Counted from the stretch's first letter, positions 48,553 through 63,794 are shown. The stretch: DNA of 64,000 nucleotides from Epithemia pelagica (GCA_946965045.2 OX337242.1:124001-188000), one strand, 5' to 3'. The notes: generated by a model not told the origin, from the sequence alone. Numbers and translations: made by a program.

Positions 48553-49623
48553 TAGCATGTTTTTGGAGTCGGAGTGTCTGCTTCCGGATGAGTCCAACGG
48601 CATGAAGTATGAAGTGTCAAGCCGGAACATTCAATCTGACTAAATGACGAATTACAATTTGACGAAACGACATCTTGACTGTCCAACAGGTAGTACTCCT
48701 CTTCCAGATACTCCTAGGAGATTTCTTGCGCTCAAGTCATATCCCTCTTCACTATACTCTGGTAGATTCTCTCCATGGGACTCCTCCCCGAAGCAAAATA
48801 CGGAATGTGGAGCTTTGGGATCTACTCCTCTAGATAGAAGCTAGCTAGGTAGCTTCTTTTGCTGGAACGGGTCTATTGGACCAGATTTCCGGTCCATGTG
48901 GATTGACCAACCTTGACGTGAAATACAAGTGTTCGTTGTGGTTCCCCCCAACAGCCCTCCTAATAATTATTTGGCAGTGTAGGCACGCGTGTACTAGCAG
49001 TGATGCGACTCCACCTATTCCCCAAAACGAATGAGACGCCTCGTATTCTGAGAATGGTACGGCCAAACGATCCCTTTCTATTATAAACAAGTGCTACAAA
49101 ACAAAACACAAAAAGAGTAGAGTGTGTAGTTTGTAGTCCACAAACCAAAGTGTATGCCGTTGGGGCTCGTGAATTTCCATTCGTCCAACTTTTTCTCTCT
49201 CTAGTAGAGAGAAAAAAAGACAACTGTATTGATCCCTCCAACGACGACGACGACGACGAGGTCTCACTGCACAACACGAATACTTCACAGATACGCGATC
49301 TCGACAGTCTCTCTCTCTTTCTTTTTGAGTTAGGCGTCAATTCTCTTTTTTTTTTTCGTTCACGCACAAGGCGTCATTGTGATCCTTGTCATTGTAGTGG
49401 CGGTTGAGTGGCCTGAGATACTAGAAAGCAACCGTTGTTACCAGTGCCCAGCAAAATCAAGCAAGCAAGCAACAAGAACTCAATCTCTCTCATGAACGAA
49501 ACAACAACAAGAGCAGCAACCATTTTGAGACGCAGCATAATTCATCCATATCTGAAGTAAGAAGGAGGGCCAACACCAGCAGCAGCAACAACAACGCCCT
49601 GGTAGGTGTCGTCCATTCTCGGC

Positions 49624-52503
49624 ATGAATCGATTGCCCCAACCAACAGCACAGGATGGACCCGCACAACCACAACCAGCACAACATCAACAACAAGCACA
49701 ACAACAAGCACAAGGGCAAAAACGATCCGTCTCCTTTCCTCCTTCGGCCAAGGCCGCATTGTTTCATCAACAACAACGGCACTCGCAATCCCAATCCCAA
49801 TCACTGGGCCGGTTGGAACCATACTTGACATCAGCAGCAACAGGAACAACAACAACAACAACAAGACGAGGAGATCAACGATGGCTGGCACAACAAGAAC
49901 AAACTGTACCAGTATCACGATCCGCAATGGCAGGGGCCGAACGAGGAGGAGGCCCCGAGGCACAAACACCACAGTCACAAACACGTTCACGACCACGACC
50001 ACCGCGGCTCTTGTACGATCCCACTACCGATCATGACTTGTTTTCCCCCTATCATGTCTTGATTCGACAAAACATTCAAGTCGTACAAGTAGTACCACAA
50101 GCCGAGGAACCACCATCTGCTCAACCAGGACAAGAGGATGGCCGCAAACGGTGGCATCGTTCCAGTTCCCTGCAGAGACCCTTTGCCGGTCAGGTGGGAT
50201 TGCAATGTCGCTTTTGTGCTCAACAAGCCATGAAACAACGACAGGAGCAGCAGCAACAACAACAACAACAACAACATGCCACTGCGCAAGCAATCGACAG
50301 GAAAGAAAGACTACCAATATCACTGCCAAGTACCCACGACCAACAGCCATTCAGTGGAAAACAACAACAACAACAAAAACAACCTTCCTCTGTTGAATTG
50401 CCTCCACCAACCGGCGATTCAGGAGACAGCAGCACTGCAGATCCAGACTCGGCCAATTCTGTTTCACCCACCCACTCTCCCTTGTTGAAGGGTGTTGGTA
50501 GTGGGACGACTCGCAGCACAGTGGCTCCAGCAGCAGCAGCAGGAGCAGCAGCAGCAGCCGCTACAACCAATGACTTGATGAATGCCTCCACCTTGTCCTT
50601 GTCCATGAGTTCCCTCTATCTGGGATCCTCCTTTTCGTCCCGAACCTCCTCCACGAGCATTCCCAATTTGGAAGCCTCCTCTTCTTCCTTTTCGTTTGCC
50701 TCCTCCCAACAGTTACTCAACTTGGGTGCCTCCTCCTCCTCTCTGGTATCCAGCACGAGCAATCTACCAGTCACAGCATCCACGACACCACAAGCACAAG
50801 GTGCAGCGACACTGGATGGTGATGGTAGTGCTGCTGCTGGTGCTGCTGCTAGTGGTTCAGCTCATGTTCCCTTAGTCATTGCATCAGCACCCTTGGCAAC
50901 GACTCCATCATCATCCACAACCGTCTCTGGCACAAATCAAGCTCCTTCTCAGTCTCCAACCACCACAACCAGTGACACTAGCACCACTCTCTCACCAACA
51001 GCGCCGTCTCAATCTCCAACCACCACAACCAGTGACACTAGCGCCACTCTCTCACCAACAGCGCCGGCACTTTCGGATGCTTTGCCATCTCCTCCTTCTC
51101 CTCCTTTGGAACCACTGCTGTTGGATTCTTCGTCCTTGCCATTTTCCTCCTTGTTGTGGCCTCGTGTCGAGGAGTTGCCTCTGGGTGCCGTTCAATTTCC
51201 CCGCCAATTGAGTCATGTCGCACAAGCGGCCCAAACCATTGCCAATTCGCATTGGGTCGATCAATGTCATGCCATTCCTCCGGCCGTGCGCATGGAATTG
51301 TTCAATTTGCGAAGTACGCAGAATACGGGCACATTGAAAACGGCCTGGATGGATCGCATGTTGGCATTGGGCATTGTCGAAGATGTCGTGGAAGATGATG
51401 ATGATGATGATGATGATGAACCCTTGTCGTCGTTGTCTCTGGACCCAGCCGCAGGGACAACCACCAAACGTCCACGCAGTCGACGAAGAGGTCTGAGGTA
51501 TGCCCATGAACATGAAACCATTCGTCGCCGGCAGGACGAACTGGATGACTATGACAATGACGACCAAGAACACGACGCACAACAACACAACGACGACGAC
51601 GACGACGAAAGAGAACACCAGGACCCTGCGTATTATCCCACACACGCCATTTCTTCTTCATCATCTCGCTCTCTATCACCACCACGTCCCATTACATTAA
51701 CTTCAGTATGGCAGTCCATGACCATGGACCATTGGCCTCCGCAATTACGAGGGAGTAGTAGTAGTGCCACCGGTAAGGAATTAGACCTTGCTCCCAACCC
51801 AAATCGAGTCATGGTGGAAACCGAAGAAAACCAATTTCCAGCCATGCCAAAGGCCTCCACAGAAGTGGCAGCCAATGCCAGCCCCACTCGACAACATGGA
51901 AGGACGACAACATGGCAACCTTCGGATCCACATCAACAACTCAAAATTGACCAGATTCCTCTCTTGCCTCTTCCAGGGAGTCCCAAACGACTCAAAGAAT
52001 TTGTCTTGCAACAGCAACAACTGCAAAGAAGGAGTCGTGAAGGAAGAGGAGGATCACATTTGGAGGCCGAGTCGTCATCCTTGTCACAACAAAGCCCGCC
52101 CAAAGAAGTTCAACGCAAACCATCACCACTTCCAAGTAAGCTGCAGGATCATCATCAACATTCAGATGAGCACGACAAACAACGCCATCCTTCTCCGAAT
52201 CAACAAGTCGAATCGTCTTCCTCGTCGTCGGTCCTTTCGGTAGACGAACTCACCTTGTTGGGGGACAAGACGCATCCATCCACGCTGGAAGATGTCCGAC
52301 GAAGCAGCAGTAGCAGTAGCATCAGTATCATTATCAGTGGAAGCGATCTTGGAAGTGGAGACGACGACATGAGCAGCAGCAGCACGAGTAGCAGCTGCAG
52401 TATTACTTCCAATGTCAGCAGTAGTCACAGTCCTTCCCACGAAGCATCGCTCGAATCAGCCGTGGGAACCACCGAGCCCGACGCCCAAGAAGATTCGTGG
52501 TGA
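49624..52503 (+). CDS. Second GQVGxxCxxC-family paralogue (959 aa)
   Basis: First ATG at 49624; same conserved blocks as 38214-39863; 60-bp internal tandem duplication at ~50941-51066; poly-Q, poly-A and poly-D tracts. Confidence 0.8.
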   Translation: MNRLPQPTAQDGPAQPQPAQHQQQAQQQAQGQKRSVSFPPSAKAALFHQQQRHSQSQSQSLGRLEPYLTSAATGTTTTTTRRGDQRWLAQQEQTVPVSRSAMAGAERGGGPEAQTPQSQTRSRPRPPRLLYDPTTDHDLFSPYHVLIRQNIQVVQVVPQAEEPPSAQPGQEDGRKRWHRSSSLQRPFAGQVGLQCRFCAQQAMKQRQEQQQQQQQQQHATAQAIDRKERLPISLPSTHDQQPFSGKQQQQQKQPSSVELPPPTGDSGDSSTADPDSANSVSPTHSPLLKGVGSGTTRSTVAPAAAAGAAAAAATTNDLMNASTLSLSMSSLYLGSSFSSRTSSTSIPNLEASSSSFSFASSQQLLNLGASSSSLVSSTSNLPVTASTTPQAQGAATLDGDGSAAAGAAASGSAHVPLVIASAPLATTPSSSTTVSGTNQAPSQSPTTTTSDTSTTLSPTAPSQSPTTTTSDTSATLSPTAPALSDALPSPPSPPLEPLLLDSSSLPFSSLLWPRVEELPLGAVQFPRQLSHVAQAAQTIANSHWVDQCHAIPPAVRMELFNLRSTQNTGTLKTAWMDRMLALGIVEDVVEDDDDDDDDEPLSSLSLDPAAGTTTKRPRSRRRGLRYAHEHETIRRRQDELDDYDNDDQEHDAQQHNDDDDDEREHQDPAYYPTHAISSSSSRSLSPPRPITLTSVWQSMTMDHWPPQLRGSSSSATGKELDLAPNPNRVMVETEENQFPAMPKASTEVAANASPTRQHGRTTTWQPSDPHQQLKIDQIPLLPLPGSPKRLKEFVLQQQQLQRRSREGRGGSHLEAESSSLSQQSPPKEVQRKPSPLPSKLQDHHQHSDEHDKQRHPSPNQQVESSSSSSVLSVDELTLLGDKTHPSTLEDVRRSSSSSSISIIISGSDLGSGDDDMSSSSTSSSCSITSNVSSSHSPSHEASLESAVGTTEPDAQEDSW

Positions 52504-53666
52504 AATCAAGACCTCTCCTGGCGGTTGTTAAAGTTGATATCCAATCCAACTGTGAGGAGGAAAATGTCATTACAATGCTAAAATGATGCCTCCATGTGCA
52601 CTCGGGTGATATCGACCATTCAAGACCAACGTTGTACGGATGACTCTTCCATATGACGGCGAGCCAAGAGATCGAATAATGATCTCTTTCGGACTCGAAA
52701 CTGCTTTGTTTGCTATTCTATAGCACAAACCAGGAACTTGGCCAAAAGGGAAATAGAATACCCACAACAGAAGCTTTTCCGCATTTCTCTTGCGTAGTAG
52801 TTTGGATGATGTAGTTGTCCTCTAGAAGAACGAAGGGTATCTGCGCATCTACCCATCACGAGGATGTGTGTGTCGTAGCGATACTCAGAGCGACCTATAA
52901 GCGATTGAAATACGCGTGACGTCTGCCCGCTCCGGTCGCGCGGGGCGAAGTGACATGTAAGAACCCCACTTGACCAGAGGCCTCAATAGATGGAACTACT
53001 CCTAGTACTAGGTAGATCTCCTCTACCTGCATCATGTCATGTACCCACCAAGCAGGGTTTTGAATTCCGAATTGAGATTTTTTCTAATTCCCAAAATTGG
53101 GAAGAAATTTAAGCGAAATTCCGTTATTTCCGCCTATTTCACCGTCCATGAAATCCCAAATACACAATTTTAGTTCATTTTGACAGTTACGACAAGGAAA
53201 TTTCCTATTTTCCCTCCATTTTCCCCACCCCTCCCCTCACAATTCCCAATTCCCAATTTCATTTCAAGTACTGTCTTCGACAATTCTGAATTTCCATTCA
53301 TTTCCTCCCCACGTATTTCCAAATTCCCAATTTCATTCCATTTCGCCATTCCCTGCAATACGAATTCTCTATTTCAATTCAATTCACATTTCCCTAGCAT
53401 AGAATTCTATATTTCCTCGTATGTCTTGTATTGCCGATCCCAACCATACAAAATCTCATAGTGACAAGATACATCGTCTCCTCGTATATCAGCAACCAAC
53501 CAGCACCTCCTTGGTCATTGACCCACAGCAAGAAACATCCCTGATCCTTTCATCTTTCCCCCCTCATGCTAGGACGCACATGTCTTCATGCTTGTATCCT
53601 GGTTATTCGATCCATCAAAACAATCTTCAAAGCCCAGTTTCTCTATCGACTTTGTCTGATTCCACC

Positions 53667-56600
53667 ATGTCAAACAGCAACCCAAACAACTCGTCCCAGT
53701 CACCTCCTTCTTCCCAAAACAACGCAAGCAATTTGACCCAAGTAACCCAAGCCGACTCAAACAACAATCAAAATGTTGCTACAGTTCAAAATGAAGGATC
53801 TTCCTCTACCGTTGATGGTGTTGATGACAGTGACTTAGCTGATCCGGTTGCAGAGGAAGTACAAGAATTGTTCAAGAAAGAAAAATCCTATGTCAAATTC
53901 CGAGACCCACCAAAGAAACATTTCAAGAATCTCAACTCCTATTGGGGGAAAGTTGATCATCTTGATTTCACCCACCTTGTTAAACAACGACAGAAAATCC
54001 CATCACAAGAACTTGTTCCATACGAGGGCCTGATCAGATGCTTTGACATGATAAGACAAGCCTCCCGTGAAGATCAGGAAGCGCCGAAATCGACATGGGG
54101 ATCAATCTGTAAACGTCTGGTTGCATGTCCCATTTGCTTCAAGGACCCAAACGCCTCCTTCTTACAGTCGACTCTTCTCTGTGGCACCCAGCCAAAAGGT
54201 GTGTCATCCAACGTTGGACAACACCGACGAGACTTTCATCCGAAGCTCGTCGAAAAGGAAGAGGAAGAAGGCATTCAACACCCGACGAATGTGGAAAGCA
54301 GCCAGTCGCTCATGACATCATACAAAGGGGCGACCATGCTATCCAAAGAAGAGGCCCGATCCAAATTTAAGGAAGCAATCTACAGGTTTGTCAATGACAA
54401 CAGCCTTCCTACATCGACCGTAGAGAAGGAAAGCTTTCGGCAGCTGCTACAATTTGCCATACTGCAGGGCCCAAAATTATCCAAAAATGACGCAGTAATG
54501 AGCAATAAGGCCATTACGAAAATGCGACTTACTTCCTATAATTCGTTCATGCGGACCATTGCCATGTTGGGTAGAAACATTCGGAATGCGTACAAGGCAC
54601 TCTGCGGAAAGGCAATTCCCTTTGGAACAATTTGCCATGATATATGGCAAGGGCACAGGAAAGATATCCTTGGAATATGCATTTTCCTGGTCGACCCAAG
54701 GAACTGTGCAATGTACAGGATCCCTCTGGGATTGTGTGAAGTAGCTGGGCATTCTGCGGCCGCTGTCGCAAAGCACACCCTGGATATACTCGGATCAGTT
54801 GGTTTCACACAACGGGATTTGTCTTCGTCAGTGAACGATAATACGAATGCTGCTGTTTTAGCAGGAAAATATATCGTCGGTAATCAGACCGGCGGGAAAT
54901 GTGACATGCACCGTGCTGAGTTGATCCTGAAACACGGAACTGGTATTGCTGTGCGGCGCCGTGGTGGCTCAATTCAGGACGAGTTCCCTGACTTTGTCAA
55001 AGTCTACAAGGCCGCTCTCAAACTTGTGGCATTGGTAATGAACAAGCGTACCAAAAAGTTCGAGGAAATTCGCCAATATGCAGCAAAGCACAACATGGTC
55101 GCAATCGAATTACCCATTCCAAATTCTACCCGTGTCAATGGTTGTGTGATCATGTTCCACGGTCTGTTGAGAATGAAGTTTGTTTTTGATTCTTACTACG
55201 CAAAGGAATCTCCTGACAATGAGTTTAAGCGTGGTTATCTAACAAAGCAACAGTGGCAAGCAATTGCCGAATTTGAAGCAAAACTGGCTCCTCTAAGGCA
55301 TTGTGCCATGACTCTACAATCAGATGACCCATCATCATCTGCCGGTTCCTTGTTGGAGATTTTTGGATGCAAACATGGTATTGAATGCCATAAGAAAGAA
55401 GGTGTTCGAGTGCTTACTGTCAATCCATCGGATGACAACCTGGATTTCCAACGATGGGATGCAAAGCCAACCATAGAGAAGCTCAAGGGAAAGCGAAACA
55501 AGATCCAGTATGCAAATCTACTTGCCTCTTCCAAAGTCTTAATCAATCGCCTACTGAGGGAGTTCCGAACATACATGATGGCCGGCGACGACGTCCATGC
55601 AGAGAATGCGATTTGCGGACACCCCTTCCTATGCGCAATGGCACCCAGTGTTCTACAGTCAATTTCTATTTACAACGCCAACGATGTTGAGAGGTTGAAG
55701 AAGAATTTTGTTACCGACATGGTGACAAAATTCTATGTTCCAAAGAGATCTGGGCAGCCAACAACCCAGTCTAACGTTGCAAGAGCGGTGGCAGAGGGTG
55801 AAAGCCATCCTGAATCAGAGTCAGATTCGGATGATGACGGTGTTGTTGGTATGTTTAGTATCTTTAAGAAGCATAACCAAACACAGGAGTTGGCTGCGAC
55901 GGTACTGCAAACCGATCAAGCGGGACAGAATCCTACCCCTGCCCCTGCTACACCAGTCACTGACAAGGATAACTTGTACACCGAATGTGAGAAAGAATTC
56001 AACAGCTACAAAGACTTCTGCAATCGAATGATTGCCAAGAATTGGGAGAAATTGATCCGGGAATATCCAACGCCTTTGTTCTCAGAAGAAGAGCCCAAAT
56101 GGACCCCAGCCGAGAAAAAGAAGTTCGTGAAAGCATGCAACTCAACCGAGTTCAATAGGGTGAGCAAGTATTTTGATGTTCTTAAATGGTGGTCCGTGAA
56201 CAAGGGCAATTTCAGCAAAGTCTTCCCGAGTGCGATAATCTGGTTGTCAAAGCCGTCCACAAATGCATTCCAGGAGAGGATTTTTTCTTCTTCTTCCTGG
56301 TTTGACAGCAACCGGCTAATGCGTTGTCAGAGCAAGAAGCACTTTGAGGTCCGAACAATGGAACTGGTCACGCGCAAGGTGAGAGAGGAAATCAAGAAAA
56401 ATGAAGAACTATTAGAGGGGAACCAGTGGAATCCCATTACAGTCGAGGACAATGAGAATGAGCAGGAAGAAGAACCCGCGTCGGTCCCCACTGATCAACA
56501 AACAAGTGCTGCTGCTGGGGCTGTGGACAATGTAGCTCGTACCAATAATCAACAAACAAACAACGCTATTGCCATCGCTCCCATTGAGGAGGGTACTGCG

Positions 56601-57302
56601 GATGATGATGGGGTGGCAGTGGTTGAAGATGATCGAGATTTAACAGATGGAACATTCAAGGGTGATATGAAACGACTTGAAAAACTGCTCAAGGGTGTTG
56701 AGACTATGGACAAGCATCATGAGTCAGGAACTGAAGGACTCGAGGGGGTCATAGGATGCGAGTATAAGTTCAAGTCAAGCGACACAGATATGGACAAAGA
56801 AGAGACTTACGATGAAGTGGAACTACTAGATCTCGTGGACAAGAATGACGTGGACCAAATGTCAGTCATGGGTAGATTGAAGAGAGACGATGACCCATTT
56901 GCTTGTGACGATGATTCCTGCATCATCGAAGAAATAGAAGAACAGCAGTTCTTCTTTAAGGCGACCATGAATGTCACAGATTCGTCATTGCCTGGAGCTT
57001 CGGGCCAGGTCACGACTATGTCCACAACAGCTTCGAAGGGATCAAACTCGGGCCAGGACACAGGCAATCAATCTGTTAAAACTCCAGTAACAAAATCGTC
57101 CAAGAGAAAGGCAATCGGCAGTGGTACCAGGTCTGCAAGTTCCAAGAGTTCGAAACGGATGCGCCAGCAGTCCATTGGTACCATTACAACCAGTTCCGGT
57201 CGAAAGACGAAAGTATCTTCTAAAAAGGCACCTCCTGAACATCGAATGCAACAAGAGCAACAACAGGAACGACGAGTGAGTCCCCGGAAAAAGGACAAGT
57301 AA
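53667..57302 (+). CDS. hAT transposase (1211 aa from ATG 53667; frame open from 53421)
   Basis: BED-like CPIC...HRRDFH; catalytic D (CHDIW), D (NDNTN), CxxH (CDMH), E (FQERIFS); C-terminal dimerisation domain DVLKWW...FPSAIIWLSKPSTNAFQERIFSSS; long charged tail. Confidence 0.93.
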   Translation: MSNSNPNNSSQSPPSSQNNASNLTQVTQADSNNNQNVATVQNEGSSSTVDGVDDSDLADPVAEEVQELFKKEKSYVKFRDPPKKHFKNLNSYWGKVDHLDFTHLVKQRQKIPSQELVPYEGLIRCFDMIRQASREDQEAPKSTWGSICKRLVACPICFKDPNASFLQSTLLCGTQPKGVSSNVGQHRRDFHPKLVEKEEEEGIQHPTNVESSQSLMTSYKGATMLSKEEARSKFKEAIYRFVNDNSLPTSTVEKESFRQLLQFAILQGPKLSKNDAVMSNKAITKMRLTSYNSFMRTIAMLGRNIRNAYKALCGKAIPFGTICHDIWQGHRKDILGICIFLVDPRNCAMYRIPLGLCEVAGHSAAAVAKHTLDILGSVGFTQRDLSSSVNDNTNAAVLAGKYIVGNQTGGKCDMHRAELILKHGTGIAVRRRGGSIQDEFPDFVKVYKAALKLVALVMNKRTKKFEEIRQYAAKHNMVAIELPIPNSTRVNGCVIMFHGLLRMKFVFDSYYAKESPDNEFKRGYLTKQQWQAIAEFEAKLAPLRHCAMTLQSDDPSSSAGSLLEIFGCKHGIECHKKEGVRVLTVNPSDDNLDFQRWDAKPTIEKLKGKRNKIQYANLLASSKVLINRLLREFRTYMMAGDDVHAENAICGHPFLCAMAPSVLQSISIYNANDVERLKKNFVTDMVTKFYVPKRSGQPTTQSNVARAVAEGESHPESESDSDDDGVVGMFSIFKKHNQTQELAATVLQTDQAGQNPTPAPATPVTDKDNLYTECEKEFNSYKDFCNRMIAKNWEKLIREYPTPLFSEEEPKWTPAEKKKFVKACNSTEFNRVSKYFDVLKWWSVNKGNFSKVFPSAIIWLSKPSTNAFQERIFSSSSWFDSNRLMRCQSKKHFEVRTMELVTRKVREEIKKNEELLEGNQWNPITVEDNENEQEEEPASVPTDQQTSAAAGAVDNVARTNNQQTNNAIAIAPIEEGTADDDGVAVVEDDRDLTDGTFKGDMKRLEKLLKGVETMDKHHESGTEGLEGVIGCEYKFKSSDTDMDKEETYDEVELLDLVDKNDVDQMSVMGRLKRDDDPFACDDDSCIIEEIEEQQFFFKATMNVTDSSLPGASGQVTTMSTTASKGSNSGQDTGNQSVKTPVTKSSKRKAIGSGTRSASSKSSKRMRQQSIGTITTSSGRKTKVSSKKAPPEHRMQQEQQQERRVSPRKKDK

Positions 57303-57408
57303 AAGTCCAAGTAATTTCAGACATGCATACCCTAAAAATCCAACTCCATGACGAGGATTGATTAAAAGATAATGAAGTAGTGAGTAGTTCCATGAAGCAA
57401 TTCCATTA

Positions 57409-59277
57409 TTATATGCTGTAGGACCTATATATACGAATGAAATTGTTGTATAGGTTGTAGATTTGTTTTTTGTTCGGTAGATGGCGGTCCTTATCAAGGC
57501 GTCTGACGGTGAAATCCATATGAGCGTCAGTGCATTTCCATCGAGTAGCTGGATTTTGTAACAATTGGCCAAAGGAACCGAACATTGGATTGATGGCTTG
57601 CCATTCGTCTTTCGGTAGCCAAGATTCCAGGATGCAAGAGCCGAGGTCAGGGTCGCTTATCGTTTTTGGGATCCAACCAAGGGCAATGGAACATCTCAGC
57701 ACATGGACATCTGTTGGTATGCCGTCATTGCGGTCAAAGGCAAAATCTAACACGATGGTCGCTGTCTTGTACCCAATTCCATGAATTGTCACCAATTCAT
57801 CCACGGTGATTGTAGAGGGGATAATCCCATTGTGATTTTGTAAAAAATAATCCGCTGCATTGACAATGTTCTCTGCATTCTGGAAATACCGACCAGATTC
57901 AGATAGCAGTGAGCAAAGCATATCCATTCCAAAGTTTTGGGCGATTTCAATGGTGGCCTTGCTGGAAACAAAACCAGATTGAAAAATCCGAGGAACCAAA
58001 GTAGCCAGTTGCCTGTCGCTAGTGCTGGAGCTCATCAATATCACTACAAGGCACATGAAGGCACGGTCACAGTCTGCTGTTAGGTTGTCATCAATCCAAC
58101 ACCTCCAACTGTCCCGTGGAGATGATAATCCACAACTCAAGAAGTAGACATGTAAGGACTGCAAGTACCGAAGGTCCTCTGTCCATTTTTCAATTTCAAC
58201 TGGCGTGTGAGAGGGTATTTTGGATTTGTTGTATCTCGGCATTCCTCCAGCCTTTGTCTTGGGTTTTTCGCCAGGCATATGCCTACCAGTGTTAAGATAG
58301 CTAGTGGCCTGTCGAGCCTTTGAAGATTGTTGTATTAACGCTGCAGTGTGGGCATGTTGTCCACGTGTACAAATCCGGGGAGGAAAGTTTGGAGCTTTTG
58401 GTGTTGAAGGGGGGTTGTATAGAACAGATTTGTCGGAGTTGTCGGCATCTGCTTGGGTGGGTGGGGAAGGGGAAGTGACAATAGTGTCACCCATAACATT
58501 GGCTTGGTCATTGTTCGCACAGTCAGGTTGATTTTCACAGTTATGGTCATTATCCTCCAGGGTGGGATGCATTTCACGGGCAACTTGTTGCAGGAGATAT
58601 GATAGAGAGGGGGGATAAATAGGTTGTCCTTCAAGCATTTTGTTGTGTACCGAAATGGATGCATCCTCGCGAATCAGCCAGACAAGGAGAGCATCTGAAA
58701 CATCTGATTCGGTAATTTCACTCTGATTGTTATGTGACAGATGATCCTCTACAAAAGAATGAGCGGCATCGTATGAATGGTCTTGATTTATAAGAAACGT
58801 AGGAGAACAAGAGCATAGAAGGGAAAGATAGGGAAGATCATCCTGTGGGGGAGAGACGTGATATTGTCGGGATATGTTGGTTGAGTTTGCTTGTGGAGAG
58901 TTGAGATTGGGCAATACACTGTGGTCAACCAGTAGCGACATAAGATGCAGGAAATGTCCCATGGAAATGGTTTGTTTGACTGCACATGTATGACTGGAGA
59001 GTTTGTTGAGAGGACCGGTGGAGTATCGGACATCTGCGTCTTCTCGAATCATCCATACAAGAATTGTGTCCTTTATGGCTTCGATTCTTGATTCAAAGGA
59101 CTCCGAATCTGGTATAGAAATCTCTTGAGTGATAAACTCAAAAAAGGAAAAGGGAGCGTGTGTCAATGCAACAATTGGTTGACAGGTAACTTCAAGAGAG
59201 ATGGTTTCTTTGTCCATTCTTCCCAACTCTTCGGCATGATGGTTGCTTCTGTTTTTTGGTGTGTAGCCTGCAGCCAT
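57409..59277 (-). CDS. HhH-GPD DNA glycosylase/AP lyase (Endonuclease III/NTH1-like) inside the hAT element (622 aa from ATG 59277)
   Basis: FMCLVVILMSSSTSD...GRYFQNAENI...HNGIIP...ELVTIHGIGYKTATIVL...IPTDVHVLR...LESWLPKDEWQAIN...FGQ aligns by eye with Nth/NTH1. Catalytic Lys (57766-57768) and Asp (57709-57711) present; no 4Fe-4S Cys cluster. Confidence 0.9.
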   Translation of the reverse strand: MAAGYTPKNRSNHHAEELGRMDKETISLEVTCQPIVALTHAPFSFFEFITQEISIPDSESFESRIEAIKDTILVWMIREDADVRYSTGPLNKLSSHTCAVKQTISMGHFLHLMSLLVDHSVLPNLNSPQANSTNISRQYHVSPPQDDLPYLSLLCSCSPTFLINQDHSYDAAHSFVEDHLSHNNQSEITESDVSDALLVWLIREDASISVHNKMLEGQPIYPPSLSYLLQQVAREMHPTLEDNDHNCENQPDCANNDQANVMGDTIVTSPSPPTQADADNSDKSVLYNPPSTPKAPNFPPRICTRGQHAHTAALIQQSSKARQATSYLNTGRHMPGEKPKTKAGGMPRYNKSKIPSHTPVEIEKWTEDLRYLQSLHVYFLSCGLSSPRDSWRCWIDDNLTADCDRAFMCLVVILMSSSTSDRQLATLVPRIFQSGFVSSKATIEIAQNFGMDMLCSLLSESGRYFQNAENIVNAADYFLQNHNGIIPSTITVDELVTIHGIGYKTATIVLDFAFDRNDGIPTDVHVLRCSIALGWIPKTISDPDLGSCILESWLPKDEWQAINPMFGSFGQLLQNPATRWKCTDAHMDFTVRRLDKDRHLPNKKQIYNLYNNFIRIYRSYSI

Positions 59278-60266
59278 TGCACTTTTGGGTGTCGTAATCG
59301 AATACACTTTCTTGAAGGAATTATATTCTTAAATACAGAATGATATCACACAAGCAGGGGTGTGTGGGAGATGAGGAGTGGGCGATGGGTCGATACATGT
59401 ATCGTGAGGAACGCTTAATTTCGTTCATTATTCGGGAATTGAAATGAAATTGAAGAGGGAATTGAGAATTCCATTGCAGGATAAACGGGAATTGAGCATT
59501 TCCATTCAATTTCCATATAGTGAGATTTGGGAATTGAGAATTCAATTCCATTCCGTGTGTATGTAGATCCGAAATTGATGATTCAATTTCATTCCTAAGA
59601 TTCCATGGGAGGACTTGACCATTTCAATTCAATTTGAAATAATATTGTCGGTGAAATTTAATATTCTAATTCAATTGAATGGAAGTGCTATTCTGGAATT
59701 TTGTATTTTATTTTATTCGCATGCTTTGGAGAGAGAAATTATGACTTCAAATTTCATTGCACAGTTTCCACGATTAGGAATTAATTATTTTAATTTCAAT
59801 TCAAATACTTCATTTTGGAAATTCCAAACCCTGCCACCAAGATCTCTTTGGGAAACCAAATACCAAATCTTTTCTGCGAAAGAGACCAAGAAGAGAGCAT
59901 GAATGAGATTTCTTCCTTGCCCCCATTAAGTTGGGCTTTGCCTATCTACCATGGGTTCTGCGGCTAACAATTACCACCGCACGAGTATAGTCAGGTTCGC
60001 GGAACCTAGCAGCCGACAGGTCAGGTACTCTACCGTAGATCGATTCATAGATCCAACAACCATGTGTATATTGAAATCTCTGGAGTGAACAAACGAGTGA
60101 GTCGTCTCTTTCTCAGGAAAACTAGTTTACAACTACTCCGCAATTCACCCCTCTACTAGAAATTAGCCATCGTTATTCGTACTCACACATTCCACAAATC
60201 AACAAACCCAACACACCAGATACATATTATGTCACAGACACAGACAGACAAACATACACATACGAA

Positions 60267-61452
60267 CTAAATGCTGGGAACGTCTTGGAGCGGATTGTTG
60301 CTGTTGAAGGTAGTGGCGCGAGGGATATACATGGAGGCAGTTTCCGTTGCGTTGTCGTCGTTCTTGTCGATGCGATCCTGCGAGGGGATAGCGGGAACCA
60401 CCCGCCGTTGCCCCGGCGGGTCGTGTTCCACGGCAGGCAGGTACGTGGGTCCCGAGTGGTGCAGTGCCCCATCTCCTCCAAAGGTAGAAGAGGACAAGAG
60501 GGAGACGGAACTACTGGGTGGAAGCATCACGGACGATTTTCGGGTGCGACTGGACCACGAAACAAGATCGGCCGCAGCTCCACCGTTGGCGGTCGCCTTC
60601 CTTGTCGTCGTTGTTGTGGTTGTCGTGTCGGGCAAGGCTTTGGGGTGGTAGCACGCCTTTTGGAGGGGATCCAAAAACGTATCTCGTACATATTCCGCCA
60701 CGAGACGATCCGATTCGCCCAAGGCCCGGTCAAAAAATACCGCATCCGGTGGCGTATAGTCTGTCATGTCGTCGTCGAAGTCCAAATCCATGTCATTTCC
60801 CATGAGACTGTCCGCGCTACTACAACCACGACAGAGTCGTTGTTGCCGTTCGAGGGATTGCACATATTTGGAATAACCCAGTACTTCGGCCGAGGTGAGC
60901 CAAACATCGTTGAGAAATTGGCGCGGATTGGTTGTCAAGGACAAGGAGGGCAAGGTCGTGGACCGTACCAATTGCTCTTCGTTCTGCAGGGGTGCTTCCA
61001 GCGATATCATGCCACTGGGGACCGTAATATCTTCATCGTCAGAGTCATCCTCGTCCGTTTCGGCGGTACTCGAATCCATGGACGGCACAGATCGGTTGCG
61101 CAACGTTTGCAAATCGGCTGCCGGCGGCGCCGCCTTGGAACTAGAAGTAGGTGGTGTGGTTGGTGGTGGTGGGTCCACGACCAAAAGGGTACTCGATGGT
61201 TCAAATGCTTTGTTGTTGTTGCTGTTTTGACTGGAAAAAGATGCGTCCCTGGTGCTACTACTCTTGTCGTCGGTGGGAACTGCGGTGGGCCGGTTGGCCG
61301 CCGTATTCTCCTTATCCGTATGGGTCATTGTAGTACCAACATGTTTGCTGTTTGTGGTATTCGTACTGCTGGTAGATTTGCGACCACGCCAAGAAAATCG
61401 CCGAGAAGAGAGTGAAGTACTGCGTTTCTTGGAATCCGTCGCGAGTGGTGTC

Positions 61453-61505
<53 letters not shown>

Positions 61506-63794
61506 GGTTTTGGTAGTGCTGTTGCTGCTGCTCTCACTAGGAGCGTCTCCTCCTCGTTTGATGGTGGTAGAAGAAGGAGACACTGGAGAGGACCGTGGTG
61601 GTCGTGGTGGTACCCCGCCATGGGAAGAAGTGGTCCGAGGGGGAACCACCGTCTTGTTGTTGTATGTGTTGTTGTTGTCCTTGTCGTCGTGTGGAATGGT
61701 AGTTGTGGAAGAAGGAGGAGGAGGAGCGGTGACTATTCCTCCTGCCAAAGTATCACGCTGAGTCCGTTGACGAATCAATTCGTACGAATCTTCCTCAACA
61801 CAGGTTTGCAACAAGAGCAAGGTCTTTTGCTCCTTATTATTCTTCTTCTTGTCTTGTTCGACGGCGTGTTTGTTGTCGCTTTGTGGAACGGGTGGACCGG
61901 TCGATCCTGCCAGTCCCATGGTTGTCGTGTCGTTGGACTGGACTCTGGTTCCCGACGTGTCATTGTCAACGTTCTTGGTGGTGGGTATGGGTGGCAATCG
62001 TTCGACGGAATAGTGCCGATGGGGCGAGGGTGTCGGAGTCGCACTGCGATGTCGTGGAGAAGCAGCCGGCGTCGTGGTACGGGACGAGGGTGGCACCACG
62101 GATCGACCCCGCGAACGACGTCGGTTGTGTGGACGATCGACACTGTTGGACCGCGATCGAAGACGACGAGGAGGCGGACCCGGACGACGAACCGGACTGG
62201 GACTAGCACGACGAGGAAGAGGAGAATGTGACTGGTTGATATTGTTGTGGATCGCTGCATTGCTTGTTGTTGTAGTGTGGGACGAACGAGATTGACTGGA
62301 ACTCTTGCTCTCGTTGTTGTTGTTGTTGTTGCGGCGACGAGGGATCCCCAGACTGGTGGACCGCAGTGTCGATGGAGACGGAGAGGATCGTCCGGTCGTT
62401 GTTGGTGGCGATGTCGCAGAAGAAGAAGAAGAAGATGATGATGAGAAAGAGGAAGAAGAAGGGGCAGCTTGTACACTATTACTGCGAGAATGATCCCGAG
62501 TTGGTGGTAATGGTGGTGATGAGGCCTCCTTCTCCGAGAATTCCTGCGGCGTTTCCTTGTCGTTTGTCTCTCTGTGCGTTGGACGGTTCGAGGGAAAAAG
62601 TTCGTCGTCGTCATAATTGTCTTCGGGAGGTTCCAAACACGCTAGAGATGCCGAAATCACTGCCGCCAGGGTGTTGGTGCTTGGATTGCTTGCCACAACG
62701 GATAATGTCGAAGAAGAAGAAGAAGAAGAAGAAGAAGAAGAAGAAAAGGATGACGAGATGTCACTTGTTTGGTGAGCAGCCGGGACACTACTGCGAGAAT
62801 GATCCCGAGTTGGGAGTGATGAGGCCTCCTTTTCCGAGAGCTTCTGCTGGGTTTCCTTGTCGTTTGTCTCTCTGTGCTTTTGACGGCTCGTGTTTCTGGG
62901 AAAAGGTTGGTCGTCCTCAAAGTCGTTGTCGGGAGGTTCCAAACACGCTAGAGATGCCGAAATCACCGCCGCCAGGGTGCTTGTGGATGGCGTGTTGACC
63001 AGGACGGATCGTTTCTTGTTGTTGGTATTGTCCTCGTCGTCATCGTCGTCATCGGTAAATTGTTCCATGAGAATGGGTGGATGGACCGAGGCCCTCCGAG
63101 AATGGCTTTTTCCTCCTCGTTCCTTGTTTCCGCGGTGCTCGGATGGTCCAGCAGTGCTGGTCGTGTTGGTTGTACCGTGCTGGAGTGTCTTGTTGTAGTT
63201 TTTGTGGTTGCGTTCTTCCAGTACTGGTGGTGCTTCTTGTTTGGGTGGTGGTGGTGGTTCTTGTGTTTCTTTTTCATCTTGTTTTGGGTCTTGTTCCGTG
63301 TCAATTTCCACCACATAAAAGGGATCATCCTTCTTGTTGTTGTTGCCGTTGGCTGCTGGTGTAAATGGTTTGGCTGGCACACGAACGCTGTTGCTCCTAC
63401 TTCGGCTCCTACTGGTACGACGACCATGACGATCCAAGGAGGCGTTGCGGGTCGATCTTGTTCGAGACGGAGACGACGAAGCAGCAGAATGATGAGTGGT
63501 GGTTGCATGACTGCTGGCATCTTCTTTGCTGGTTCGAGAAGCTGTTTCCTCGTGGGGTTGCACACGGACGCTGCGACTGACACTGCGGCTGCTGGTACGA
63601 CGACCATGACGACGATCCAACGAGGGGTTGCGGCTCGGTCTCCCTCGAGAAGAAGAAGAAGCAGTAGAGTGGTTCGTGGTGGCATGGCTGCTGCCATCTT
63701 CTTTGCTCGTTCGAGACGCAGTTTCCTCGTAAGGCTGACTTTGTGGCAAAGAATACGAGTCTCGAACCATTGTGTTGGTAGTAAAAGGAGGCAT
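60267..63794 (-). CDS. S/T/R/P-rich hypothetical protein with internal duplications (1175 aa)
   Basis: Long ATG ORF with two internally duplicated blocks, poly-N and poly-S tracts, and a more ordered C-terminal segment (RQFLNDVWLTSAEVLGYSKYVQ...). Confidence 0.7.
61453..61506 (+). repeat. (TTG)18 microsatellite encoding poly-Asn on the minus strand
   Basis: Read directly. Confidence 0.95.

What the first reader, a model, noticed from the sequence alone, without database searches (positions are those of the whole stretch)
53045..59841. hAT transposon carrying an intact HhH-GPD DNA glycosylase: candidate transposon-encoded base-excision or anti-silencing system
Seen: TIRs, an exact 8-bp TSD and subterminal arrays enclose both a full DDE transposase and a convergent, intron-free 622-aa ORF whose C-terminal third is Nth/NTH1-like, with catalytic Lys and Asp but no FeS cluster. 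Established: hAT elements normally encode only a transposase; the HhH-GPD superfamily includes the plant 5mC glycosylases DEMETER/ROS1; diatoms methylate transposons; hAT excision leaves hairpins on donor DNA. Inference: the enzyme may remove modified bases (5mC or derivatives) from the element to escape silencing, or help process excision and insertion intermediates. By eye it resembles NTH1 more than DME, so substrate is open. I know of no described hAT-glycosylase pairing.
Basis: partly seen in the sequence, partly recalled or inferred. Interest (0 to 1): 0.92.

Follow-up and report, generated by a model that had tools for sequence, protein, structure and literature searches.

The report
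hAT transposon with its own glycosylase
This is an intact cut-and-paste (hAT) jumping gene that, besides its transposase, carries a gene for an endonuclease III-like DNA base-excision enzyme. The two genes have been inherited together through a large, old transposon family, so the enzyme is part of the element and probably helps it against DNA-based silencing.

Summary
Window 53053-59833 is a 6,781-bp hAT element with CAGGGT terminal inverted repeats, an exact 8-bp target duplication (CCACCAAG) and inverted subterminal motifs. It holds a 1,293-aa hAT transposase and a convergent 622-aa ORF.

The ORF's C-terminal ~190 residues are an Nth/NTHL1-like HhH-GPD domain. The catalytic Lys504 and Asp523 are present; the FeS cysteine cluster is not.

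It is not a one-off capture. Seven further elements of the same genome, 29-55% identical in the glycosylase, have the same two-gene layout. Four have exact or near-exact TSDs. Glycosylase and transposase trees have the same topology. The glycosylases form one clade outside cellular NTH1. A sediment-metagenome contig carries a complete element of the same design.

One nested relative in another assembly lost the glycosylase yet is high-copy, so the enzyme is not needed in cis.

The N-terminal ~225 residues are a tandem-duplicated domain with no detectable fold relative.

Function is inferred. Removal of modified cytosine to resist silencing is my leading reading (~0.4). Transposition-linked repair and anti-mutation are the rivals.

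I found no paper describing a hAT-glycosylase pairing. This scan had already noted the family many times elsewhere in this genome, and one follow-up reached the same conclusion.

The parts
53045..53052 (.). Left target-site duplication CCACCAAG
   Evidence: Read directly; identical to 59834-59841.
53053..53071 (+). Left terminal inverted repeat, starts CAGGGTTTTGAATT
   Evidence: Inverted pair I8. The end pattern is found only at the two ends of the element.
53072..53420 (+). Left subterminal region, A+T-rich, with repeated CAATTCCC / AATTTCA-type motifs. Presumed transposase-binding sites and ORF1 promoter.
   Evidence: Direct-repeat families D1, D4, D7 and inverted pairs I1, I11, I16 with the right end. 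Motif hits at 53238 and 53245. GC 0.39.
53421..57302 (+). hAT transposase ORF, 1,293 aa (true start may be an internal Met). BED-like C236/C239/H268/H273; D407 (HDIWQ), D473 (NDNT), C494-H497 (CDMH), E952 (QERIFS); long acidic then basic C-terminal tail.
   Evidence: ORF. Pfam Dimer_Tnp_hAT above cut-off. Hermes match at residues 892-958. The named residues are invariant in 6 diverged paralogues.
56157..56294 (+). hAT C-terminal dimerisation block (residues 913-958), including catalytic Glu952
   Evidence: Pfam PF05699, E 1.7e-5. Alignment to the Hermes transposase.
57409..59277 (-). Second gene: 622-aa protein (stop codon included), convergent with the transposase
   Evidence: ORF. Full-length homologues at 31-47% identity. 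AlphaFold model with mean pLDDT 78.9.
57538..58095 (-). Nth/NTHL1-like HhH-GPD glycosylase/lyase domain (residues ~395-580), without an FeS cluster
   Evidence: PDB phmmer NTHL1 E 1.3e-14. Profile E 1.2e-21. Foldseek TM 0.72-0.73 by target. No Cys cluster.
57766..57768 (-). Codon of catalytic Lys504 (GIGYKTA, the helix-hairpin-helix lysine)
   Evidence: Translation. Invariant column. Aligned to the GVGPKMA lysine of NTHL1.
57709..57711 (-). Codon of catalytic Asp523 (GIPTDVHV)
   Evidence: Translation. Invariant column. Aligned to the GIAVDTHV aspartate of NTHL1.
58543..59214 (-). N-terminal tandem-duplicated alpha/beta domain (residues ~22-245) of unknown fold. Each repeat carries an invariant Trp (W75, W200) in a LVW-IRED motif.
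   Evidence: Model pLDDT 84.9. Internal repeat BLASTP E 2e-6. No fold match and no atlas match.
59278..59814 (-). Right subterminal region with four GGGAATTGAG-type motifs; presumed promoter of the glycosylase gene
   Evidence: Families D5, D2, D3. Motif hits at 59434, 59457, 59487 and 59529. GC 0.35.
59815..59833 (-). Right terminal inverted repeat (reverse complement starts CAGGGTTTGGAATT)
   Evidence: Contigs of other copies end exactly at 59833 and continue into a different flank (tables 7 and 8).
59834..59841 (.). Right target-site duplication CCACCAAG
   Evidence: Read directly.

Best explanation
Shown, about 0.95 sure: window 53053-59833 is an intact, recently mobile member of a two-gene lineage of hAT DNA transposons.

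- Gene 1 is a large hAT transposase with a BED-like zinc finger, a DDE/CxxH core and the hAT dimerisation block.
- Gene 2, convergent with it, encodes a ~600-aa protein built of three parts: a tandem-duplicated N-terminal domain of unknown fold; a conserved basic linker (TR...SRSK..I.Y...RH.PG.PPKLK); and a C-terminal endonuclease III/NTHL1-like HhH-GPD domain.
- That domain keeps the Lys and Asp of bifunctional glycosylase/AP-lyases but has lost the FeS cluster.
- The enzyme was acquired once, long ago, and has since been inherited with the transposase as a core gene under purifying selection.

Inferred, about 0.4: after expression from the element, the glycosylase is brought to the element's own DNA, most plausibly by its N-terminal domain or by the transposase bound to the subterminal repeats. 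There it excises a modified base, 5-methylcytosine or a derivative of it. Host base-excision repair then restores unmodified cytosine, which keeps the promoters and ends of the element accessible. In effect it would be an element-encoded demethylase, analogous to DME/ROS1 in chemistry and to the transposon-borne TET/JBP genes of fungi in purpose.
For: Element anatomy.

Same layout elsewhere: seven further elements of the same assembly carry the same convergent pair. CAGGGT TIRs and exact 8-bp TSDs bound exactly the two genes in L001, L002 and L006, and near-exactly in L004.

Co-divergence: pairwise identities of the two proteins correlate (r = 0.93). The maximum-likelihood trees of glycosylase and transposase have the same topology, with all strongly supported splits shared.

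Family size: 43 representatives at E < 1e-30, of which about 25 are full-length clusters at the 50% identity level. Members also come from other samples. A sediment-metagenome contig holds a whole element with transposase, convergent glycosylase and a CAGGGTTACGAA TIR.

Selection: all eight glycosylase ORFs examined are open. The chance of 622 open codons at this base composition is about 4e-17. Lys504 and Asp523 are invariant. Between near-identical copies omega is about 0.34 for the glycosylase and 0.22 for the transposase (pooled binomial P = 4e-4).

Not a host NTH1 capture: the family is one clade (SH-aLRT 98) outside the NTH1-type GVGPKMA/FeS clade.

Recent mobility: element contigs are about 6-7 times deeper than the flank and about 99.4% identical to this copy. 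They end exactly at 59833 and continue into another flank.

For the anti-silencing step:
- The fold and catalytic dyad are those of bifunctional HhH-GPD enzymes.
- CpG transitions make up 7 of 33 differences between copies and CpG o/e is 0.64-0.76, so these elements are apparently targets of cytosine methylation.
- Transposon-borne TET/JBP dioxygenases are a precedent, including in hAT7 elements (PMC12730594).
- From my own knowledge: VANC of VANDAL elements and TnpA of Spm are transposon-encoded anti-silencing proteins.
Against: - No substrate can be assigned from sequence or fold. The nearest solved relatives (NTHL1, endonuclease III) excise oxidised pyrimidines, not 5mC.
- The plant 5mC glycosylases retain the FeS cluster and have other signature domains that are absent here.
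- The elements are as CpG-depleted as other transposons of the genome, so no lasting escape from methylation-type decay is visible.
- A relative nested inside the family (L013, from another assembly) has lost the glycosylase. Its transposase cluster nevertheless has 205 member sequences, so the enzyme is dispensable in cis.
- No RNA data could be obtained.
- I did not identify the host organism or its methylation system.
Confidence: 0.42

Rival explanations
1. Transposition-linked repair. The glycosylase/AP-lyase works with the transposase at excision or integration. It might process damaged or hairpinned donor ends, help repair the 8-nt gaps that flank a new insertion, or nick DNA at the ends. 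On this view it is an accessory transposition factor rather than an epigenetic one.
For: Strict co-inheritance with the transposase over deep divergence, and similar evolutionary rates, are what is seen for true transposition accessory proteins. The Lys nucleophile implies strand-nicking lyase activity. All transposases of the lineage read TRV/TRI where hAT transposases usually have the TRW tryptophan implicated in hairpin formation (role of Hermes W319 in PMC4763223). That could mean altered end chemistry.
Against: No known hAT, or any other DDE transposon, needs a glycosylase. Hairpins and gaps contain no damaged base for a glycosylase to recognise. The glycosylase-less L013 lineage is high-copy. 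The W-to-V equivalence rests on motif position only; no tool aligned it to Hermes. In Kat1 the equivalent Trp is not essential (PMC4763223).
Confidence: 0.2
2. Anti-mutation. The enzyme removes T or U opposite G (deaminated 5mC or C), or other lesions, from the element's DNA. This would slow the C-to-T decay that methylated transposons suffer and so prolong the life of active copies.
For: HhH-GPD enzymes include T:G and U:G mismatch glycosylases; the thermostable thymine-DNA glycosylase 1kea is a fold hit with TM 0.71 by target. CpG transitions are the main recognisable mutation class between copies, so the pressure exists.
Against: CpG o/e of the elements (0.64-0.76) is no better than that of other transposons in the same loci (0.55-0.71, one at 1.09) and is lower than the flanking genes (0.85-0.9). 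CpG transitions are roughly three times over-represented among differences between copies. No protective effect is therefore visible. To my knowledge the known mismatch glycosylases of this fold are monofunctional and lack the Lys, which is invariant here.
Confidence: 0.13
3. Other or lost enzymatic role. The domain may serve as a DNA-binding or scaffolding module, or act on a base modification not considered here (for example 5hmU or an alkylated base). Alternatively the gene benefits the element through effects on the host, such as a damage response that induces transposition.
For: The large conserved N-terminal domain and linker have no known relatives. Substrate is open. Nearby FeS-less HhH-GPD proteins of unknown role exist, including P0035 and the two-domain protein P0048.
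Against: Invariance of both catalytic residues and of the surrounding pocket motifs across about 30 diverged members argues for retained catalysis.
Confidence: 0.2
4. Chance passenger. A host NTH1-like gene was recently trapped between the TIRs of one hAT copy and has no function for the element.
For: Gene capture by DNA transposons is common (established knowledge).
Against: The same pair occurs in at least 8 diverged elements plus an environmental one, with congruent trees. The family forms a separate clade from NTH1-type enzymes, its ORFs are intact and its catalytic residues invariant.
Confidence: 0.01

Closest known systems
Classical hAT transposons (Ac, hobo, Hermes, Tam3)
   Same: 8-bp TSD; short TIRs beginning CAG; subterminal repeat arrays; transposase with a BED-like zinc finger, DDE plus CxxH motifs and the C-terminal hAT dimerisation block carrying the catalytic Glu.
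   Different: A second, conserved, convergent gene. The transposase is about twice the usual size (1,200-1,360 aa), with a long acidic/basic tail. The position of the usual TRW tryptophan reads V or I. Sequence similarity to Hermes is detectable only in the C-terminal block.
Fungal DNA transposons carrying TET/JBP dioxygenase genes (Kyakuja-Dileera-Zisupton, hAT7, IS3EU, Harbinger and others; PMC12730594)
   Same: Cut-and-paste transposons, hAT included, that carry an enzyme acting on modified DNA bases inside the TIRs. The proposed role is counteracting cytosine methylation.
   Different: The enzyme class differs: an oxidising dioxygenase there, a base-excising glycosylase/lyase here. The hosts are fungi. 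According to that paper the TET genes moved repeatedly between transposon superfamilies, whereas here the glycosylase has co-diverged strictly with one hAT lineage.
Endonuclease III / NTHL1 (Nth family of HhH-GPD glycosylases)
   Same: Best sequence and fold match. The HhH lysine and the GPD-loop aspartate of bifunctional glycosylase/beta-lyases are present.
   Different: No FeS cluster. NCBIfam nth scores 64-81 bits against a cut-off of 211.7. There is a 390-residue N-terminal extension with a novel tandem domain. The protein is encoded by a transposon and forms a separate clade.
DEMETER / ROS1 5-methylcytosine glycosylases of plants
   Same: Bifunctional HhH-GPD chemistry with Lys and Asp. 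Large non-catalytic regions are attached to the glycosylase core. The role in removing silencing marks is the functional analogy proposed here.
   Different: DME/ROS1 keep the FeS cluster and have characteristic extra conserved domains. No specific sequence relationship was found: none appeared among PDB or profile hits. Activity on 5mC is untested here.
Transposon-encoded anti-silencing proteins (VANC of VANDAL Mutator-like elements; TnpA of Spm/En) - from my own knowledge
   Same: A second ORF of a DNA transposon that is conserved with the transposase and reduces methylation of its own family.
   Different: Those proteins are sequence-specific DNA binders without known catalytic activity on DNA. 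Here the second ORF is an enzyme.

Membership tests
hAT transposon superfamily | 8-bp target-site duplication | tested here: met
   CCACCAAG on both sides. Exact 8-bp TSDs also in L001, L002, L006 and L013.
hAT transposon superfamily | Short terminal inverted repeats beginning with 5'-CAG / YARNG | tested here: met
   CAGGGTTT at both ends. CAGGGT in all related elements with identified ends.
hAT transposon superfamily | C-terminal hAT dimerisation domain (Pfam PF05699) with the catalytic Glu | tested here: met
   24.9 bits against a gathering score of 21.4. Aligned to Hermes around SERTFS/QERIFS.
hAT transposon superfamily | RNase H-like core with two Asp and the CxxH motif | tested here: inconclusive
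   Invariant D407 (HDIWQ), D473 (NDNT) and C494..H497 (CDMH) lie in the expected order and spacing. No tool aligned this part to Hermes.
hAT transposon superfamily | Conserved Trp of the RW motif (Hermes W319) used in hairpin formation | tested here: inconclusive
   The family reads TRV/TRI at the motif position in 17 of 18 transposases scanned; the pattern did not match in P0190. Equivalence to W319 is by motif only. The W182 equivalent (D-x-W) is present in 15 of the 18.
HhH-GPD DNA glycosylase superfamily | Helix-hairpin-helix followed by a Gly/Pro-rich loop with a conserved Asp; the two-lobed helical fold | tested here: met
   Foldseek NTHL1/EndoIII TM 0.72-0.73 by target, rmsd 2.5-3.1. 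Profile E 1.2e-21. Pfam PF00730 is below its cut-off for this copy (21.9 against 26.2 bits), but 4 of 7 members hit it, best E 4e-7.
Endonuclease III / Nth family (bifunctional) | Catalytic Lys in the HhH motif | tested here: met
   K504 is invariant and aligned to the NTHL1 lysine.
Endonuclease III / Nth family (bifunctional) | [4Fe-4S] cluster loop C-x6-C-x2-C-x5-C | tested here: not met
   Absent in all family members, present in most NTH1-type hits.
Endonuclease III / Nth family (bifunctional) | Score above the curated equivalog cut-off (NCBIfam TIGR01083) | tested here: not met
   64-81 bits against 211.7. The family forms its own clade.
DME/ROS1 5mC glycosylases | FeS cluster and the DME-specific flanking domains | tested here: not met
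   No FeS motif. The only Pfam matches are weak HhH-GPD and HHH hits, both below their cut-offs, and the N-terminal domain has no relatives.
DME/ROS1 5mC glycosylases | Excision of 5-methylcytosine | not testable with these tools
   Needs an enzyme assay.

The most novel reading that the evidence does not exclude
The glycosylase/AP-lyase is part of the transposition chemistry itself. Base excision and beta-elimination at or near the element ends would supply or assist a strand break. In ordinary hAT elements that break is made by transposase-driven hairpin formation, which in this lineage may be altered (TRV in place of TRW). This would be a cut-and-paste mechanism that recruits base-excision chemistry.
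Probability: 0.07. Interest if true: 0.95.

Novelty: new variant of a known kind. Interest (0 to 1): 0.75.

Why it matters
Eukaryotic DNA transposons are known to carry regulators and, in fungi, TET/JBP dioxygenases. I found no description of a transposon lineage whose second core gene is a DNA glycosylase.

If the enzyme removes methylated or otherwise modified bases from the element, it would be a second, independent enzymatic route by which transposons fight DNA-based silencing. It would also be a natural parallel to the origin of plant DME/ROS1-type demethylases from Nth-like enzymes.

The protein offers three further points of interest. It is an FeS-free Nth-like glycosylase. It is fused to a confidently modelled domain with no detectable fold relative, which may be a targeting module. 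And the family is apparently active, with near-identical copies, which makes it experimentally tractable.

The glycosylase-less derivative lineage gives a natural control for comparing methylation and decay.

Tried and rejected
- Recent capture of host NTH1: rejected by the congruent trees and the separate clade.
- RNA evidence: both run searches returned only three runs of unknown kind. They hold contigs up to 509 kb, so they are genomic assemblies, not RNA. Expression is therefore untested.
- JGI metagenome scan with the family alignment: it gave one unrelated 27%-identity locus.
- Word-indexed search with the glycosylase domain alone: it returned only family fragments, so no named cellular neighbour was found.
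- Fold of the N-terminal domain: nothing above noise in Foldseek PDB, AFDB clusters, VIA-align wide search or ESM Atlas features.
- Aligning the transposase core to Hermes by sequence: failed outside the C-terminal block.
- Ends of the L005 element: not found. A 1.6-kb direct duplication lies at its left side.
- Convergent partial ORFs in L007 and L008: they have acidic-then-basic tails like the transposase C-termini, but no detectable homology. They count as consistent only.
- Organism identity: not established. An RRP4 query showed only 'eukaryote'.
- Test for an empty site (an allele without the insertion): not attempted. The element is longer than the 6,000 letters allowed per read-laying run.


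Full report
**1. What is in the window**

The element spans 53053-59833 (6,781 bp).
- Its ends are imperfect 19-20-nt inverted repeats that begin CAGGGTTT (pair I8; sequence).
- The 14-nt end pattern CAGGGTTTKGAAWT occurs only at these two places in the 64-kb window, against 0.13 expected by chance.
- The repeats are flanked by an exact 8-bp direct repeat, CCACCAAG, at 53045-53052 and 59834-59841.
- The ~400 bp inside each end are A+T-rich (GC 0.35-0.39).
- These stretches hold short repeated motifs in opposite orientation at the two ends. Six of the eleven window matches to GGGAATTGAG (one mismatch allowed) lie there (families D1-D7 and pairs I1, I11, I16).

This is the standard anatomy of a hAT element.

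**2. The two genes**

ORF1 (53421-57302, +, 1,293 aa):
- It matches Pfam Dimer_Tnp_hAT above the gathering score.
- It matches the Hermes transposase over residues 892-958, where QERIFS aligns with SERTFS and its catalytic Glu.
- In an alignment of six paralogues only 29-43% identical to it, these residues are invariant, in the usual hAT order: a C-x2-C...H-x4-H pattern (C236, C239, H268, H273), D407 in HDIWQ, D473 in NDNT, C494/H497 in CDMH, and E952.

ORF2 (57409-59277, -, 622 aa from the ATG) converges on ORF1; the stop codons are 106 bp apart.
- Residues ~398-577 match human NTHL1 (E 1.3e-14) and bacterial endonuclease III.
- A family profile raises the NTHL1 match to E 1.2e-21.
- An AlphaFold model built on 30 family sequences has mean pLDDT 78.9.
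- The model superposes on NTHL1 and endonuclease III-DNA complexes with TM 0.72-0.73 by target and rmsd 2.5-3.1 Å.
- Lys504 (GIGYKTA) and Asp523 (GIPTDVHV) align with the catalytic Lys and Asp of NTHL1. They are invariant in seven homologues and nearly so in thirty.
- None of the family members has the C-x6-C-x2-C-x5-C cluster loop, which most NTH1-type hits do have.
- NCBIfam's nth model scores 64-81 bits against a cut-off of 211.7. The domain is therefore Nth-like but not an Nth orthologue.

**3. The rest of the ORF2 protein**

- Residues ~22-245 fold with confidence when modelled alone (pLDDT 84.9, pTM 0.73).
- The domain consists of two similar alpha/beta units. The duplication is visible in sequence: BLASTP E 2e-6, with a shared LVW-IRED motif and invariant W75 and W200.
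- It has no convincing relative. Foldseek against PDB gave E > 0.1. AlphaFold DB clusters gave E > 0.02 with TM < 0.25. A Foldseek-independent search gave a best Z of 5.2, which is within noise. ESM Atlas feature scores stayed below 0.5.
- A disordered stretch (245-301) follows.
- Next comes a conserved basic linker, with T304, R305, Y327, H333 and G336 invariant in the seven-sequence alignment.

**4. It is a family, and the pairing is old**

- A protein search found six full-length homologues at 31-47% identity. Five are in the same assembly as the window.
- Each lies immediately upstream of a convergent transposase gene of this same hAT lineage: 1,230-1,258 aa in L002, L004 and L006, and split into two or three ORFs in L005 and L001.
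- A further locus (L010) holds two such elements side by side.
- CAGGGT inverted repeats with exact 8-bp TSDs enclose just the two genes in L001 (7,070 bp), L002 (6,814 bp) and L006 (6,819 bp). L004 has a 7-8-bp TSD.
- Across the eight elements, glycosylase identities are 29-55% and transposase identities 27-61%. The two correlate with r = 0.93.
- Maximum-likelihood trees of the two proteins have the same topology, with all strongly supported splits shared. This indicates one ancient acquisition followed by joint descent.
- An exhaustive profile search found 43 representatives at E < 1e-30, about 25 of them full-length at the 50% identity level. The clusters I looked up have up to six members each, many on long contigs.
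- Members outside this genome come from a sediment metagenome, another metagenome and a Logan run.
- One 8.7-kb sediment contig (L012) carries a whole element: a CAGGGTTACGAA TIR, a 1,363-aa transposase and a convergent glycosylase.

**5. Selection and mobility**

- All eight glycosylase ORFs examined are open. At this base composition 622 open codons have a chance of about 4e-17.
- Three genomic runs of the same organism hold a ~99.4% identical version of the element. Its assembler depth is about 480-600, against 67-95 for the junction contig.
- Those contigs stop exactly at 59833 and continue into a different flank. This points to several near-identical copies at other sites, and so to recent transposition. 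Depth is only a rough guide to copy number.
- I classified the 33 differences. The glycosylase has 5 synonymous and 6 non-synonymous changes, omega about 0.34 (P = 0.08). The transposase has 10 and 8, omega about 0.22 (P = 0.002). Pooled, P = 4e-4.

**6. Origin of the enzyme**

In a tree of the glycosylase domain with 93 other top hits, the transposon family is a single clade (SH-aLRT 98). It lies outside the large clade of NTH1-type enzymes, which carry the GVGPKMA motif and mostly an FeS cluster. It sits near a few other divergent FeS-less proteins. It is not a recent copy of a host NTH1.

**7. Facts that bear on function**

- The elements have CpG o/e of 0.64-0.76, with excess TpG/CpA. Flanking genes have 0.85-0.9. 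Other transposons in the same loci have 0.55-0.71, and one has 1.09.
- Seven of the 33 differences between copies are CpG transitions, roughly three times the 7% share of CpG positions (a rough test).
- The elements therefore look like targets of cytosine methylation and do not visibly escape its mutational cost.
- In a second assembly (ERZ25042306, L013) there is an element with the same TIR (CAGGGTTTGGAA), an exact TSD (AGCACCAC) and a related 905-aa transposase.
- That element has no trace of the glycosylase, either by tblastn or by an unfiltered profile search of all six frames.
- Its transposase cluster has 205 member sequences.
- In the transposase tree it is sister to the glycosylase-bearing L012 element and is nested within the family (its branch is long, so the placement needs care).
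- This is best read as secondary loss. It shows the enzyme is not required in cis for proliferation.

**8. Mechanism**

Shown:
- a two-gene hAT lineage;
- a catalytically equipped Nth-like glycosylase/lyase domain kept under selection;
- joint inheritance with the transposase.

Inferred: what the enzyme acts on.

I rank removal of methylated cytosine or its derivatives from the element's own DNA first, at about 0.4. The reasons are:
- bifunctional HhH-GPD enzymes are the class from which plant 5mC glycosylases arose;
- second ORFs of DNA transposons repeatedly turn out to be anti-silencing factors;
- fungal DNA transposons, hAT7 included, carry TET/JBP dioxygenases (PMC12730594);
- these elements appear to be methylation targets.

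The other readings:
- A role in transposition-linked repair: about 0.2.
- Anti-mutation repair of T:G or U:G: about 0.13, weakened by the CpG data and by the invariant lysine.
- Another substrate or role: about 0.2.

One detail could hint at altered end chemistry. All transposases of the lineage read TRV/TRI where hAT transposases usually have TRW. The tryptophan in question, Hermes W319, is implicated in hairpin formation (PMC4763223). However:
- the equivalence is by motif position only;
- the equivalent Trp is not essential in Kat1;
- the glycosylase-less relative has the same substitution.

**9. Novelty**

Four full-text searches found no description of a hAT element, or of any eukaryotic DNA transposon, with a DNA glycosylase as a core gene. 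Repbase reports and subscription journals are not covered by that library.

Within this scan the family was noted many times on other DNA of the same genome. One follow-up (s1-242207) reached the same main conclusion. The present copy is a further, intact and apparently young member.

I file it as a new variant of a known kind: a hAT transposon with an unprecedented class of accessory enzyme.

Noticed in passing
L013:4950-12014 (assembly ERZ25042306): A related hAT element with the same TIR (CAGGGTTTGGAA) and an exact TSD (AGCACCAC). It has a C-terminally shorter 905-aa transposase and 3.3 kb of ORF-poor DNA in place of the glycosylase. Its transposase cluster has 205 member sequences. In the transposase tree it is nested in the family, which suggests secondary loss.
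   Followed up: partly
window 55134-55136 (V572 of ORF1); same column in A4 and in P0181-P0198: Where hAT transposases usually read TRW (Hermes W319, implicated in hairpin formation), this lineage reads TRV or TRI in 17 of the 18 transposases scanned, including the glycosylase-less one. The pattern did not match in P0190. The equivalence is by motif position only.
   Followed up: partly
L010:2892-8427 and L010:10001-15818: Two elements of different subfamilies (glycosylases 35% identical) lie about 1.6 kb apart in the same orientation.
   Followed up: no
L005:8128-8170 and L005:9731-9773: An identical 42-nt string (containing CAGGGGTGGAGAATATCCG) occurs twice, 1,603 bp apart, upstream of the glycosylase gene. 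The ends of this element could not be defined, and its transposase is split into 1,092-aa and 260-aa ORFs.
   Followed up: no
P0048 (796 aa, source unknown): A protein with two tandem FeS-less HhH-GPD-like domains, the second with GIGHKIG and AMDRHV. It falls among the divergent sequences outside the NTH1-type clade, on a very long branch.
   Followed up: no
window 56400-57299 and the C-termini of all family transposases; L007:2719-3273, L008:1902-2039: The transposases end in a poorly conserved acidic stretch followed by a Lys/Arg/Ser-rich tail. The partial convergent ORFs next to environmental glycosylase genes have the same character.
   Followed up: partly
window 54000-59900: Marine sediment, biofilm and marine metagenome runs hold 6-13% of the sampled 31-mers of the glycosylase gene. 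Near-identical pieces therefore occur in environmental samples.
   Followed up: no
window 49606-52503 and 60267-63794: The element sits between two long, low-complexity (Ser/Thr/Gln/Asn-rich) ORFs of 965 and 1,175 aa on opposite strands. It interrupts neither.
   Followed up: no
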